Under the pieces are notes generated by a model. It made no database searches. It was not told where the DNA came from and worked only from the letters and a program-made list of their open reading frames with translations. The position numbers and the translations under genes are program-made. This document shows, one piece after another, positions 47,521-51,062 of a stretch of DNA of 64,000 nucleotides. The stretch lies in contig CBFFRP010000297.1 of NCBI GenBank assembly GCA_965644295.1, forward strand, positions 806,001-870,000. Direction: 5' to 3'. The stretch is from Paraphysomonas bandaiensis (lineage: Eukaryota; Protista; Chrysophyceae). Each line of letters begins with the position of its first letter. The first letter of the stretch is position 1.

Positions 47521-47685
47521 CAGGGGGTGTTGTGCATATCGATTTGTTCATCGATTTGTTCATCGTTTATTTCATCGAAAAATCATCGTTTTTTCATTAA
47601 AAAGTCACTTTTTTTCACTTTTCACTGAAAAAACGATGATTTTTCGATGATATAAACTTTGAACAAAATGCACAACCACCCCCAG
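47521..47685. mobile_element. MITE-like element (~165 bp) with CAGGGGGTG-type TIRs
   Basis: cagggggtgttgtgca ... tgcacaaccacccccag, with internal inverted atcgaaaaatcatcgttttttca / tgaaaaaacgatgattttcgat; partial copy at 14365-14477. Confidence 0.75.
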
Positions 47686-47751
47686 ATGGATGTAGAGCAC
47701 AGTGTACAACACAGTGGTATAGTATATGAACAGCAGGAGTACAGCTTTCTC

Positions 47752-47853
47752 TGTATAGTGTATAGTGTGTATAGTGTGTATTGTGTGTATAGTGGTATAG
47801 TGTGTGTAGTGTGTATAGTGGTATAGTGTGTGTAGTGTGTATAGTGTGTATAG
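47752..47853. repeat. (GTATAGTGT)n-like minisatellite
   Basis: Imperfect tandem 9-mer upstream of the gene at 48028. Confidence 0.85.
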
Positions 47854-48027
47854 TCGTACAGCAGTGTCTGTACTGGTAGTTCCATATAAACAAAGTTGAA
47901 CAACTCACCTGATCCTCATTAATACACAGTGTCTCAATCTCCCAATAGATCCAATCATTCAAATGATATCATGAAACCCTCTCATTTACTTGTTAATACA
48001 GTGTGAATCATCTCGAATCTATTAACT

Positions 48028-50691
48028 ATGAGATTATATACACGGATATTCATCACTATACATCTCTATATACTTACATCTATCGTATGTAAGAATAGTG
48101 CAGGTGAATTAGGTGATGGATACACTTCTGATCAATCTAGAGATGGATTTTTTGCTGAATTAGATAATAATGCTAATGGGCAGATTAGTTTAGATGAGTT
48201 ACGAGAGGTAACAGTCACACGTATATATATATATATACATGTATACTAACAGATAGGGTTACTATAGTATATTGAAGATACAGGAGGAAATTCATTAGAT
48301 GAACAGAGTGAAATTCAAAATGCTGTTTCAAGTGTTTTGAATAATTTAGATGGAAATAAAGATATGATCTTAAAGAAGGATGACTTGGCAGTGTACTGGC
48401 AGTCATTAGGTCAGACACACACCCTTCAATGTTTTATAACATCTCTAATTATATATACAGCATCATTGCTTCCGACGGACGAAGTTGCTGAGTGGGTAGC
48501 ACACTCACAGCTGATGCCGGAATCCATTGTAGCAAGTTTCATAGAGAATGGTATTCATAATATACATTTAGTAACAAAGTAATGCGACTGTTGTGTAGAA
48601 ATAACGGGCTACGATTTTCCAGAGTTAATTGAGAATGATGGATATCTTTTGGAACAGGAACTCGAGATCAGAAGGATGACCATCAAACGTCGTCTTTTGA
48701 GGGGAATGAAAATGAAGTTGTTAGGAATGGGTCGCCCTCCTCTTTCTCCTACACCTCCTGCAGTAGTATGGACTGATACTTCGAAGTGCTTCACACATAT
48801 TGCGGTTGAATGGGAGACTGCAAATAATGAAGCGGAAGGGAACAAAGACGTTTATCCAGTCCATAAATATCTCCTTCAGCGACAAGATTTGGATTACACC
48901 AGCACTCATCCTGGTAAGCCTCGATGGATAACTGTTTACGATGGCATGGATACACGTGCTTCAGACACCATACTTGTACCTCCTGAGTTGCCCAATTCCC
49001 TTCTATCCCTCCCTGTGACGCAGACCTACCGCCTTTCCAGCTGGAATGTCATAGGGAGGTCGGATTATATGTACCTGAAGCTGGATTTGCCTCGGCCTAC
49101 TGAGGTATCATCAGATAGTTGTGATGAGCTGGCATTTACCCAATTGTCTCCAATCATTTCACCTGTCGCGGAACTCAGGCGCACTAGTCACCATAATTCG
49201 CATTCGTCTAATACCTCTACAGATATCAGCGAACAAATTGAAAACTCCGAGACTCCGACCGATTTGTCGGTCTACACTTCTGTCATGACTCATGCCACCT
49301 CACCAAATGGAAAGCAGGCATCCAACTGGACTGCCAAGGAAGTTCTTTTAGGTGTATATAGATTGTTTTCTGTGGCAATAGGTCTCATTTTTCGAGGATC
49401 GTCGTGGCTAATGTCTCTGGTTTATGTGTTGTCGATTCTTGCAACGTTTACAATATCCTTAATTCGTCTAAGAAACATGAAGAAATATAGTGATTCTGAC
49501 CAGAGAAGTGCGACTACTTCCCGGCGTCAGAGCGCTGTTAAAGGGGAAAGTATGTGGGGAAGTGTTGTCACTTGTTGTCAAATGTCCTTGCTGAAGCCCT
49601 CACTTGCGTATTTGTGTCCAATTGTGTATAAATATTCCCGTGATTTTGGTAACACTCGTCCATGGATCCAGCCACTGACCAACTATGTGTGTTTAGTCAC
49701 GAAGTCTCTGTTAACAACTGTTTCAAGAGATTCTTCTCCTGCTCCATTGACGAAACAACCGTCTTCGCGGTCAAATGCTACGCAATCGGCTCGACATCCA
49801 TCAGGAAACTCCAGTGGATACTCATCTTGTGATGACGATGGATCATTCTATGAAGATGCGTTGCAGAATGACACGTCTGGTGACTTGAGAGATGAAGATG
49901 ATGACCATAAATTCTGTTCTGTGTGTAAAGTAAAATTCAAATTTAAACCACATAAAATGAAATGGAGGAAACGACACCACTGCTGTAAATGTCTCAATGT
50001 GTTTTGTAGTCGGTGTGGTGTAGTTCGTCATTCTTCAATGTTGCAGTGTCCTGTGCCCGGGAGCTGTACCTGTATGCGGTGTGAAGGATTTGCTTCTACT
50101 GGACAGCTGCAGTGTCAGCCGGCGATGGGAATCGGAATGGTCAGTCGGGCAGCCATGCAGCTACACAATCATTCCGTAGAAACGCATCCCTCAAACGTTG
50201 ACCCGAAGGTGAGGAGCGACGCAACCAAGAGCTATTCACTTTCCAGCAATCGATCTCTCTCCATGGATGTGCAAGATTCATTATCTCCTCCAAAGCCTAA
50301 AAAAGACAACCCTGTTTCTAGGCCAGCTTCTCGTGGATTCAATGAACAGGAGGAACTAATTCAGAATAGCAATGGAGTGAAGAAAGAGAAGAAAGGACAC
50401 AAGAAAGGAAGTCGAAGTTTTGGCTCTTTTAAAGAGCTTAGTAGTATGTGGGTACCGAAACACCAATCTGACGGAAGCACAACGCATGTTAGTGGTAGAC
50501 CCCCTAAAGTCCCTCTACCCAACGTGCCGAGTGCGTGGCCGCCAGTTCCGATCTTACGGCGAAGGCCTAAGACTAGCCCTGCAACTACCCCAGAACGATT
50601 CGACTCCTCTCCCTCACCTGAGCATATATCTGAAACTCCTGTGGTGCCACCCGTTTCTACTCCCTCGTCTGGTATATCGCTGCCTCATTAG
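48028..50691 (+). CDS. STIM-like protein: signal peptide, EF-hand pair + SAM, FN3, TM, cytosolic FYVE-type zinc finger, basic/Pro-rich tail (~834 aa)
   Basis: Introns 48208-48267, 48410-48460 and 48551-48598 keep the frame. DNNANGQISLDE (EF loop); DLAVYWQSLASLLPTDEVAEWVAHSQLMPE...ITGYDFPELI...IKRRLL...LLGMG (STIM-type EF-SAM); IAVEW..HKYLLQR..WITVYDG..YRLSSWNVIGRS (FN3); TM WLMSLVYVLSILATFTISLI; CSVC..F...KRHHCCKC..VFCSRC (FYVE-like). Confidence 0.8.
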
Positions 50692-51062
50692 TTGTCATGA
50701 ATGTGCCCCGTAAGCCGTTCAAAGACGTATTAAATCAAGCGGTAAAGTATGTATAGATATAATATGTGTTCGTCGTCGAGTAGATAAAACTACTTCCTGC
50801 TTTCATTCTCTGTTGATTTTGCGCTTCTTATATGCTAGTTCTACATTATACTAGTAATTAAAAACGATATTATAATTTTAATTCGAGGAATTGGCCCTAG
50901 ATCACTTGATTTATACGCTAATGAGTGTGAGGTACTTGTTATTTGTTAACACTGTGCGTTCCAGATTCCAGTATAAAAGCTCTCAACTTGATCGCGAAAT
51001 CTGTACCAAACGAATAGTCCTTAAGTTCGTTGATGGGGATTAATAACCAAGACACTACTACA

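What the first reader, a model, noticed from the sequence alone, without database searches (positions are those of the whole stretch)
48028..50691. STIM-like luminal Ca2+ sensor wired to a FYVE-type finger instead of the Orai-activating coiled coils
Seen: after splicing three short introns, the N-terminus reads signal peptide, EF loop, second EF-like loop, SAM. By eye it aligns closely with the STIM1 EF-SAM (DL...W......DEV.EW......P.....F....ITG...P.L......L...R..KRRL.....L.G.PP). An FN3 domain and a TM segment follow. The cytosolic part has no long coiled coil (no CAD/SOAR). It has an acidic patch, an 8-Cys finger with RHHC (about 49914-50082), a polybasic stretch (KKEKKGHKK) and a Pro-rich tail. 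Established: STIM EF-SAM oligomerises when ER Ca2+ falls; FYVE domains bind PI3P and gain affinity through avidity. Inference: store depletion could cluster FYVE fingers and build Ca2+-regulated ER-endosome/vacuole contacts, an Orai-independent STIM pathway. Caveat: the finger lacks the WxxD motif and has HHCCKC instead of HHCRxC, so PI3P binding is uncertain.
Basis: partly seen in the sequence, partly recalled or inferred. Interest (0 to 1): 0.8.

Follow-up and report, generated by a model that had tools for sequence, protein, structure and literature searches.

The report
Diatom STIM-like calcium sensor with FYVE-like finger
This diatom gene is real and expressed, and it encodes a membrane protein whose outward-facing end has the same calcium-sensing EF-SAM module as animal STIM but whose cytosolic end carries a FYVE-like zinc finger instead of the Orai-opening coiled coils; STIM-type sensors were thought to be confined to animals and their closest relatives.

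Summary
The gene has four exons (48028-48207, 48268-48409, 48461-48550, 48599-50691) and encodes 834 aa. One 2,765-nt transcript contig carries all three splices, from the 5' UTR to past the stop.

The domain order is signal peptide, canonical EF loop, second EF loop, SAM, FN3, TM, acidic patch, zinc finger, polybasic patch, Ser/Pro-rich tail.

- **EF-SAM:** modelled on an ortholog that is 63% identical in this region. Its best matches are the three solved STIM EF-SAM structures (Z 14.4, 10.9 and 10.7; the next match scores 8.3). Sequence profiles agree.
- **Finger:** homologous to FYVE domains (Vps27, E 2.7e-7). WxxD, the last Arg of RRHHCR and RVC are missing, both here and across almost the whole family, so specific PI3P binding is unlikely.
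- **No STIM output:** no SOAR/CAD and no long coiled coil.
- **Family:** at least 170 clusters share the EF-SAM-FN3 core, and 89 of the 156 proteins checked keep a C-terminal finger. Members occur in diatoms, a synurophyte and apparently oomycetes.
- **Genome context:** the genome is a diatom's (it has silicon transporters). It holds three Orai-like loci, one paralog of this gene and no canonical STIM.

Compartment, lipid target and any link to Orai remain untested. I class it as a new variant of a known kind.

The parts
48028..48207 (+). Exon 1: start codon, signal-peptide-like segment (aa 1-25, 48028-48102) and canonical EF-hand loop DNNANGQISLDE (48163-48198)
   Evidence: Splicing model. 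Transcript contig piece 47950-48205. Pfam EF-hand_5/EF-hand_1 E 2e-4 to 5e-4, below cut-off because the exon was scanned alone. Loop positions 1, 3, 5, 6 and 12 are conserved at 91-98% in 102 relatives.
48208..48267 (+). Intron 1 (60 nt, GT..AG, TACTAAC-like branch site)
   Evidence: the pieces of X1 record 1 abut across it.
48268..48409 (+). Exon 2: helix linking the two EF hands, second EF loop DGNKDMILKKDD (48349-48384) and the DLAVYWQSL segment that aligns with STIM DLWKAWK
   Evidence: alignment to 6pw7, 2k60, 2l5y. Second-loop ligands are conserved: D97 at position 1, D/N 80% at 3, D83 at 5, D/E 97% at 12.
48410..48460 (+). Intron 2 (51 nt, in frame, GT..AG)
   Evidence: Joint 48407>48459, 'skips 51', GT..AG, in run X1.
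48461..48550 (+). Exon 3: first half of the SAM domain (SLLPTDEVAEWVAHSQLMPESIVASFIEN), with the family-invariant Trp
   Evidence: W 100%, LP 84/96%. Aligns with STIM 'W(t)vdEVvqWl..veLPq'.
48551..48598 (+). Intron 3 (48 nt, GT..AG)
   Evidence: Joint seen in runs X1, X4 and X5, the last a polyA metatranscriptome. JGI model P0002 carries an insertion at exactly this site.
48599..48741 (+). Exon 4, first part: second half of SAM (ITGYDFPELIEN...KRRLLRGMKMKLLGMGRPP)
   Evidence: SAM_2 is over the Pfam cut-off in orthologs P0004/P0005. The last helix is the most conserved block in the family.
48754..49092 (+). FN3 domain on the luminal/extracellular side
   Evidence: Family profile A5 against the PDB: titin FN3 E 2e-7, plus RPTP, contactin and NCAM2 FN3. 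Pfam fn3 matches 29 of 62 relatives, best E 1.2e-16.
49339..49464 (+). Hydrophobic region: weaker segment 49339-49392, then the main TM helix WLMSLVYVLSILATFTISLI (49405-49464)
   Evidence: Kyte-Doolittle peak 2.23, followed by RLRNMKK (positive-inside rule). One subfamily of relatives has a single clear TM at this position.
49465..49914 (+). Cytosolic linker with a semi-conserved amphipathic stretch and an acidic patch (49828-49905)
   Evidence: No Pfam match.
49915..50082 (+). FYVE-related zinc finger (C-x2-C ... RKRHHC-x2-C ... C-x2-C ... H ... C ... C-x-C-x2-C)
   Evidence: Profile A4 against the PDB: Vps27 FYVE E 2.7e-7, EEA1 5e-6, then RUFY1, WDFY3 and Hrs. AF2 model pLDDT 73.6; the top Foldseek matches are FYVE domains. 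Twelve Cys/His are conserved.
50083..50691 (+). Disordered Ser/Pro-rich tail with polybasic patch KKEKKGHKK (50380-50406), SRSFGSFKEL motif (50410-50439), Pro-rich end (50494-50688) and stop codon
   Evidence: The tail is shared only by the closest subfamily; the median tail after the finger in the family is 19 aa.

Best explanation
The gene encodes a type-I membrane protein of a diatom.

**Shown.** The extracytosolic part (organelle lumen or cell exterior) is a STIM-type EF-SAM module: a canonical Ca2+-binding EF hand paired with a second EF hand and packed against a SAM domain. An FN3 domain follows. After one membrane pass, the cytosolic part carries a FYVE-related zinc finger that lacks the canonical PI3P-binding residues, then a disordered polybasic and proline-rich tail.

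**Inferred mechanism.** As in STIM, Ca2+ bound to the EF loops keeps the EF-SAM compact. When Ca2+ on that side of the membrane falls, the module loosens and self-associates. This brings the TM helices and the cytosolic fingers together. The clustered fingers and basic patches then gain avidity for a target, either an anionic membrane or a protein partner. The output is recruitment or tethering rather than direct gating of Orai through a CAD/SOAR domain.

**Not determined.** The compartment, the ligand of the finger and any relation to Orai.
For: **Gene and transcript.** Splicing model. One spliced 2,765-nt contig covers the whole CDS.

**EF-SAM.**
- The ortholog P0005 is 63% identical to the window protein over 158 ungapped residues.
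- Its AF2 model has pLDDT 83.
- Foldseek's top three hits are the C. elegans STIM, STIM2 and STIM1 EF-SAM structures (E 9e-5 to 2.6e-3, TM 0.59-0.67).
- VIA-align gives Z 14.4, 10.9 and 10.7 over 136-144 residues. The next hit scores 8.3 and covers SAM only.
- In the ESM Atlas, bona fide STIM clusters score TM 0.68, and the next unrelated clusters score 0.41-0.47.
- The family profile aligns collinearly with STIM1 2k60 over positions 5-146, E 3.4e-4.
- A profile without the first EF hand ranks the three STIM chains first in the whole PDB.
- Pfam EF-hand_STIM1 matches 14 of 62 relatives at E<=0.5, best 2.2e-5.

**Ca2+ ligands.** They are conserved in 102 relatives: loop 1 has D96, D/N94, D/N97, G91 and E98.

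**Topology.** N-terminal signal-like segment, strong TM, then RLRNMKK. Some relatives have a single TM. Others have an extra N-terminal TM directly before EF-SAM, which puts the module between two TMs.

**Finger and absent CAD.** FYVE homology. No SOAR in the genome or in 62 relatives at E<=0.001. No coiled-coil-like run.

**Established knowledge.** STIM EF-SAM oligomerises on Ca2+ loss. Isolated FYVE domains bind membranes weakly, and multimerisation strengthens the binding.
Against: - There is no experimental data on Ca2+ affinity, oligomerisation or localisation.
- The EF-SAM model comes from a 13-sequence alignment, and AlphaFold was trained on STIM structures, so the inter-domain packing could be biased. 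The sequence-only hits to STIM are modest (E 3e-4 to 0.14).
- An FN3 domain sits between SAM and TM. STIM has none, so coupling of EF-SAM changes to the TM helix may differ.
- The second EF loop keeps its acidic ligands, unlike the hidden EF hand of STIM1, which solved structures show without Ca2+.
- The hydrophobic region before the main TM could form a hairpin, which would invert the topology.
- FN3 and the lack of an ER-retrieval motif also fit a cell-surface protein.
Confidence: 0.55

Rival explanations
1. It is a cell-surface receptor or adhesion protein. EF-SAM-FN3 faces the outside, and Ca2+ (about 10 mM in seawater) is a constant structural cofactor rather than a signal. The cytosolic FYVE-like finger and tail serve sorting, endocytosis or signalling after a ligand binds the ectodomain.
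For: FN3 is typical of extracellular receptor regions. A signal peptide is present but no KKXX-type retrieval motif at the C-terminus (sequence). STIM1 itself is partly at the cell surface (established knowledge). The tail has Pro-rich and basic short motifs typical of adaptor binding.
Against: Both EF loops and the STIM-like SAM docking helix are strongly conserved, which suggests regulated Ca2+ binding rather than scaffolding alone. The whole two-domain module matches the STIM sensor, not an adhesion domain. FN3 domains also occur in luminal proteins.
Confidence: 0.22
2. It is the functional counterpart of STIM in diatoms. Store depletion clusters the protein at ER-plasma-membrane junctions through the polybasic patch and finger, and a non-CAD part of the tail activates the divergent diatom Orai channels.
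For: The genome has three Orai-like loci over the Pfam cut-off, one with the pore Glu, and no SOAR or canonical STIM EF hand. Murphy et al. 2024 (PMC11085791) state that diatoms have Orai, that STIM1 was not detected, and that another sensor is expected. The polybasic and Ser/Pro-rich tail recalls the STIM1 C-terminus.
Against: No CAD/SOAR-like helices and no coiled coil. Most family members end about 19 aa after the finger and have no tail. The family appears in oomycetes, where no Orai was found in nine genomes (PMC4820453). No interaction test was run.
Confidence: 0.1
3. The STIM resemblance is convergent or a modelling artefact. An ordinary secreted EF-hand pair happens to precede an ordinary SAM domain, without STIM-like coupling, and the protein's role is unrelated to Ca2+ sensing.
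For: Sequence identity to STIM is only 18-21%. The SAM-only profile hit to STIM is not significant (E 0.34). The closest orthologs do not reach Pfam EF-hand_STIM1 at E<=1. AF2 may reproduce known packing.
Against: Three independent lines rank STIM first: the full-length profile, the profile without the first EF hand and the Pfam STIM1 EF-hand hits in relatives. The structural gap to the next hits is large (Z 14.4 against 8.3). Collinear motifs (DLxxxW, EVxxW, LP, GxxxP) are shared.
Confidence: 0.1

Closest known systems
STIM1/STIM2 (animal and choanoflagellate ER Ca2+ sensors; EF-SAM structures 2k60, 2l5y, 6pw7)
   Same: Signal peptide. Canonical EF hand, second EF hand and SAM as one compact extracytosolic module (Z 10.7-14.4). 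A single-pass type-I layout. A cytosolic region with a polybasic patch and a Ser/Pro-rich disordered stretch.
   Different: An FN3 domain lies between SAM and TM. There is no CC1, CAD/SOAR or other coiled coil; a FYVE-related zinc finger takes their place. The second EF loop keeps its Ca2+-ligand residues. Identity is only about 20%. The protein occurs in stramenopiles, not Holozoa.
FYVE domains (Vps27, EEA1, Hrs, RUFY1, WDFY3)
   Same: Cross-brace Cys pattern, the (K/R)HHC-x2-C core and the FC-x2-C motif. Profile E 2.7e-7 to 2e-4, and FYVE domains are the best structural matches.
   Different: No WxxD, no Arg after HHC, no RVC. Four extra conserved Cys/His (H, H, C, C). Below the Pfam FYVE and FYVE_2 cut-offs. 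In these respects it resembles FYVE-like or FYVE-related fingers (rabphilin/RIM type, CARP2), which do not bind PI3P specifically.
P. infestans 'STIM-1 homolog' noted by Zheng and Mackrill 2016 (PMC4820453)
   Same: It is probably a member of the same stramenopile family. An ESM Atlas cluster of 70 proteins, mostly from Oomycota, with fn3 and SAM is the nearest neighbour.
   Different: That paper dismissed the protein as sharing only a SAM motif. Here the family is shown to have a conserved canonical EF hand and the whole EF-SAM fold. I did not verify that the protein they saw is the same one.

Membership tests
STIM | N-terminal signal peptide and extracytosolic canonical EF-hand Ca2+ loop | tested here: met
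   Hydrophobic N-terminus aa 3-21. The loop DNNANGQISLDE fits the EF-hand loop pattern, and its ligand positions are 91-98% conserved.
STIM | EF-hand pair packed against a SAM domain as one EF-SAM unit | tested here: met
   Predicted model of the ortholog: Z 14.4, 10.9 and 10.7 to the three STIM EF-SAM structures over 136-144 residues; Foldseek's top three hits. This rests on a predicted model, not a solved structure.
STIM | Sequence match to the Pfam STIM1-like EF-hand (PF25578) over its cut-off | tested here: not met
   No hit at E<=1 in P0004/P0005. In the genome the best hit is 22.1 bits against a cut-off of 32.2, at another locus. 14 of 62 relatives match, below threshold.
STIM | TM helix directly after SAM | tested here: not met
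   About 220 residues, including an FN3 domain, lie between SAM and TM.
STIM | Cytosolic coiled coils with the CAD/SOAR Orai-activating region | tested here: not met
   Pfam SOAR: no match in the protein, none over cut-off in the genome and none in 62 relatives at E<=0.001. The longest Pro/Gly-free cytosolic run is 27 aa.
STIM | Ca2+-depletion-induced oligomerisation and Orai gating | not testable with these tools
   Needs biophysics and cell physiology.
FYVE domain | Eight Zn-binding Cys in cross-brace order, homologous to solved FYVE domains | tested here: met
   Profile A4 against Vps27 E 2.7e-7, EEA1 5e-6. FYVE domains are the top Foldseek matches, at weak E values of 8e-3 to 7e-2.
FYVE domain | PI3P-binding motifs WxxD, (R/K)(R/K)HHCR and RVC | tested here: not met
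   The window protein has no WxxD, RKRHHCC in place of RRHHCR, and GSCTC in place of RVC. In the family: 0 of 89 with WxxD, 2 of 89 with HHCR, 0 of 89 with RVC.
FYVE domain | Pfam PF01363 gathering score | tested here: not met
   13.2 bits against 27.8 for the window protein; 11-17 bits in the six relatives scanned.
SAM domain | Pfam SAM_2 over cut-off | tested here: met
   P0004/P0005 score 22.4-23.2 bits against 20.5. 38 of 62 relatives match, best E 4e-21. The window's own SAM is split by an intron and could not be scanned as one piece.
Fibronectin type III | Profile similarity to FN3 over the whole domain | tested here: met
   (titin, NCAM2 2doc over positions 2-114). fn3 matches 29 of 62 relatives, best E 1.2e-16.

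The most novel reading that the evidence does not exclude
This family is the long-sought luminal Ca2+ sensor that operates store-operated Ca2+ entry in diatoms and perhaps other Orai-bearing, STIM-less eukaryotes. It would couple an ancient EF-SAM sensor to Orai, or to membrane contact sites, through a FYVE-like finger and basic tail instead of CAD. The EF-SAM sensor module would then predate the animal lineage.
Probability: 0.12. Interest if true: 0.9.

Novelty: new variant of a known kind. Interest (0 to 1): 0.72.

Why it matters
Reviews and comparative studies place the origin of STIM at or near the base of animals (PMC7016017, PMC11506743). [quoted passage not shown]

A large, expressed stramenopile family with the complete STIM-type EF-SAM module has three consequences:
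- The sensor module is not an animal invention. Otherwise it was transferred or evolved twice.
- It gives a concrete candidate for luminal or external Ca2+ sensing in diatoms, which are major marine primary producers.
- It shows the same sensor wired to a different cytosolic output, a natural experiment in how EF-SAM oligomerisation can be read out.

It also makes the question of what controls Orai without STIM directly testable in a diatom that can be transformed.

Tried and rejected
**Searches that gave little**
- Pfam on single exons gave only sub-threshold EF-hand and FYVE hits, because the domains are split by introns.
- A single-sequence PDB search with the ortholog's EF-SAM was swamped by calmodulin-like hits; STIM2 came in at E 0.2.
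- A SAM-only profile gave no significant hit. STIM from C. elegans was the best SAM, at E 0.34.
- A first alignment that included the window's exon pieces misplaced exon 1 and was replaced.

**Absences checked**
- The genome has no SOAR domain and no canonical STIM EF-hand over the Pfam cut-off.

**Dead ends**
- Contig and cluster look-ups gave no organism names. The diatom assignment rests on silicon-transporter genes.
- Collins and Meyer 2011 could not be read because it is not held.
- Earlier scan notes held nothing on STIM or Orai in this genome.

- The whole spliced window protein has no reference, so I did not hand it to the fold or search tools. Orthologs and exon references were used instead.
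- No complex prediction was run, because I do not claim a specific binding pair.

**Readings considered and rejected**
- Plastid targeting: there is no Phe-type motif after the signal cleavage site.
- A RING-type E3 finger: the sequence profile clearly prefers FYVE.
Full report
**1. Gene model and expression**

The region 48028-50691 (+) holds a four-exon gene: 48028-48207, 48268-48409, 48461-48550 and 48599-50691. Its introns are 60, 51 and 48 nt long and all are GT-AG. The product is an 834-aa protein.

Public runs confirm the model. A single 2,765-nt contig of run X1 lies on 47950-48205, 48266-48407, 48459-48549 and 48598-50800. It is therefore spliced at all three introns and continuous from the 5' UTR to beyond the stop codon. 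Runs X4 and X5 show the intron-3 joint, and X5 is a polyA marine metatranscriptome.

The contigs differ from the window at a dozen positions, as expected for other strains.

**2. A conserved family**

A word search with exon 4 found 13 relatives. They include P0004 and P0005 (848 and 854 aa); P0005 comes from an MMETSP transcriptome and is marked complete. Both have the same order of parts from signal peptide to finger.

The window's EF-SAM (aa 26-185) is 63% identical to that of P0005 over 158 ungapped residues.

I then searched 1.84 billion cluster representatives with an EF-SAM-FN3 profile (A7):
- 2,396 hits at E<=0.001, 647 at E<=1e-10 and 170 at E<=1e-30. The weaker hits include unrelated FN3-repeat proteins.
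- Of the 156 proteins under 1,500 aa that I checked (155 from the searches plus the window's own), 89 carry the finger motif, nearly always at or near the C-terminus after a hydrophobic segment.

Pfam scans of 62 diverse members at E<=0.5, and at E<=0.001, gave:

| Pfam family | Members matched (of 62, E<=0.5) | Best E |
|---|---|---|
| EF-hand | 62 | |
| SAM | 38 | 4e-21 |
| fn3 | 29 | 1.2e-16 |
| FYVE | 27 | 1.1e-6 |
| EF-hand_STIM1 (PF25578) | 14 | 2.2e-5 |
| SOAR | none at E<=0.001 | |

One member comes from the synurophyte Mallomonas marina. The nearest ESM Atlas cluster has 70 members with fn3 and SAM, and its commonest phylum is Oomycota.

The window's genome (62.5 Mb) has at least 12 silicon-transporter matches, so it is a diatom's. 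The family therefore spans at least diatoms and synurophytes, and apparently oomycetes.

**3. Is the N-terminus STIM-like?**

*Sequence evidence*
- A 13-sequence EF-SAM profile (A2) aligns with human STIM1 EF-SAM (2k60) in one collinear stretch, profile 5-146 to chain 9-140, at E 3.4e-4. Calmodulin-type hits cover only the EF hands.
- A profile that omits the first EF hand (A6) ranks the three STIM EF-SAM chains first in the whole PDB, at E 0.012, 0.04 and 0.14.
- SAM alone is not significant, but STIM is still the best SAM hit.

*Structure evidence*
- The AF2 model of the ortholog's EF-SAM has pLDDT 83.
- Foldseek's top three hits are 6pw7, 2l5y and 2k60, at E 9e-5 to 2.6e-3.
- VIA-align gives Z 14.4 (rmsd 2.7 Å, 144 aligned), 10.9 and 10.7. 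The next hit scores 8.3 and covers only the SAM half.
- In the ESM Atlas, the oomycete cluster (TM 0.71) and two true STIM clusters (TM 0.68) stand apart from everything else (0.41-0.47).

*Caveat.* The model is predicted from a shallow alignment, and AF2 has seen STIM structures. The sequence evidence, however, is independent of AF2.

**4. Ca2+ binding**

Loop 1 (DNNANGQISLDE) is canonical. In 102 relatives, position 1 is Asp in 96%, position 3 is D/N in 94%, position 5 is D/N in 97%, position 6 is Gly in 91% and position 12 is Glu in 98%.

Loop 2 also keeps its acidic positions (D97, D/N80, D83, D/E97) but not the Gly at position 6. It may bind Ca2+ as well, unlike the hidden EF hand of STIM1, which solved structures show without Ca2+ (established knowledge).

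The last SAM helix (RRLLRGMKMKLLGMG..P) is the most conserved block in the family. In STIM1 the equivalent helix supplies the Leu anchors that dock into the EF cleft (established knowledge). That the helix does the same here is inference.

**5. FN3, membrane pass and topology**

The stretch 48754-49092 is an FN3 domain. The family profile hits titin, RPTP, contactin and NCAM FN3 domains.

The strongest hydrophobic segment is aa 407-426 (Kyte-Doolittle 2.23). RLRNMKK follows it directly, and a weaker hydrophobic helix precedes it.

Three observations fit EF-SAM-FN3 outside the cytosol and the finger inside it:
- One subfamily (P0008-P0012) has a single clean TM.
- Several distant members have an additional TM directly before EF-SAM.
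- Zinc fingers normally function in the reducing cytosol (established knowledge).

A hairpin topology for the window protein is not strictly excluded. No dedicated TM predictor was available.

**6. The finger**

The family profile (A4) hits solved FYVE domains: Vps27 at E 2.7e-7, EEA1 at 5e-6, then RUFY1, WDFY3 and Hrs. The AF2 model (pLDDT 73.6) has FYVE domains as its best Foldseek matches, though at weak E values. It is therefore a FYVE-type finger.

The residues that define PI3P binding are absent. There is no WxxD, RKRHHC is followed by Cys rather than Arg, and GSCTC replaces RVC. Among 89 family fingers, none has WxxD, 2 have (R/K)(R/K)HHCR and none has RVC. Pfam FYVE and FYVE_2 scores stay below their cut-offs.

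Twelve Cys/His are conserved, four more than a FYVE domain needs. A third metal site is possible but untested.

I conclude that specific PI3P recognition is unlikely to be the conserved function. Binding to anionic membranes or to a protein partner is more likely.

**7. The rest of the cytosolic part**

There is an acidic patch before the finger. After it comes a 202-aa tail with 31% Ser+Pro. The tail holds KKEKKGHKK, an SRSFGSFKEL motif and PPxxP motifs that are shared with the closest subfamily.

The longest Pro/Gly-free run is 27 aa and has no heptad pattern. Most family members end about 19 aa after the finger, so the tail is a subfamily addition.

**8. Genome context**

- G000 has three Orai-like loci over the Pfam cut-off (C66, C374 and C348; 37-41 bits against 25). 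The C66 frame keeps the pore glutamate in 'LCEIQI'.
- There is no SOAR and no canonical STIM EF hand over cut-off.
- One paralog lies on C362. It is 69% identical in SAM-FN3, has the same build and ends right after the finger.

**9. Literature**

- Murphy et al. 2024 report Orai in diatoms. They state that STIM1 has not been detected there and that another protein probably does the job (PMC11085791).
- Schäffer et al. 2020 place the emergence of STIM1/2 around the metazoan accretion of Ca2+-store components (PMC7016017).
- A 2024 review calls STIM absent from plants, fungi and bacteria (PMC11506743).
- Zheng and Mackrill 2016 found no STIM or Orai in nine oomycete genomes. They mention a P. 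infestans hit that 'just shared a SAM motif' (PMC4820453).
- No paper in the library combines EF-SAM, STIM and FYVE.

I found no description of this family.

**10. Verdict**

The protein fails the STIM membership tests that concern the output side (TM directly after SAM, CAD/SOAR). It also fails the FYVE tests that concern PI3P. It is best described as a STIM-like EF-SAM sensor with a new, FYVE-related output.

The proposed mechanism is Ca2+-dependent clustering that raises the avidity of the finger and the basic patches. It is reasonable, but it is inferred. The compartment is open, the lipid is probably not PI3P specifically, and a link to the genome's Orai channels is possible but unlikely to be the family's general role.

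Noticed in passing
G000:C362, L012:2457-4528 (minus strand): A paralog of the gene, 69% identical in SAM-FN3, with the same exon layout, EF loop 1 intact (DNNANGQISLDE) and loop 2 degraded at position 1 (GRENDMILKKND). It ends a few residues after the finger and has no tail.
   Followed up: partly
G000:C66:45760-46673 (L001), C374:18539-19298 (L002/L005), C348:136494-137104 (L003/L006): Three Orai-like loci over the Pfam Orai-1 cut-off. The C66 frame reads ...AGFTISSLCEIQISEE, which keeps the selectivity-filter Glu.
   Followed up: partly
P0021 (914 aa, family member from a public assembly): It has two tandem EF-SAM modules (aa 82-226 and 376-521) before FN3 and TM, and a finger with the canonical WRRHHCR motif. 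It is one of only two such fingers among 89.
   Followed up: partly
P0043, P0048, P0053, P0068, P0070, P0073, P0079, P0090: These family members have a 100-270-aa N-terminal extension and a hydrophobic segment directly before EF-SAM. The sensor module would then be a loop between two TM helices.
   Followed up: no
window 49915-50082 (alignment A4): Twelve Cys/His are conserved in the finger, four more than the eight a FYVE domain uses. A third metal site is possible.
   Followed up: no
window 47555-47667: A 51-nt inverted repeat, 90% complementary, with 11 nt between the arms, about 360 nt upstream of the start codon.
   Followed up: no
window 47751-47870: An imperfect tandem array of GTGTATAGT-like units just upstream of the gene.
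   Followed up: no
P0002 residues ~38-57 (alignment A3): This JGI gene model carries a 20-residue insertion exactly where the window has intron 3. It is probably an unspliced intron, which would mean the intron position is conserved between species.
   Followed up: no
L012:4597-5805: A microsatellite about 1.2 kb long (ACATACAT-type; it reads MYVC... in all frames) next to the paralog.
   Followed up: no
window 48751-49110 (alignment A5): A single invariant Cys at the start of the FN3 domain has no invariant partner. It could form an intermolecular disulfide on the oxidising side of the membrane.
   Followed up: no
G000, several contigs (C348, C406, C398, C150, C298, C149, C405): Many silicon-transporter (PF03842) matches, which identify the genome as a diatom's.
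   Followed up: partly
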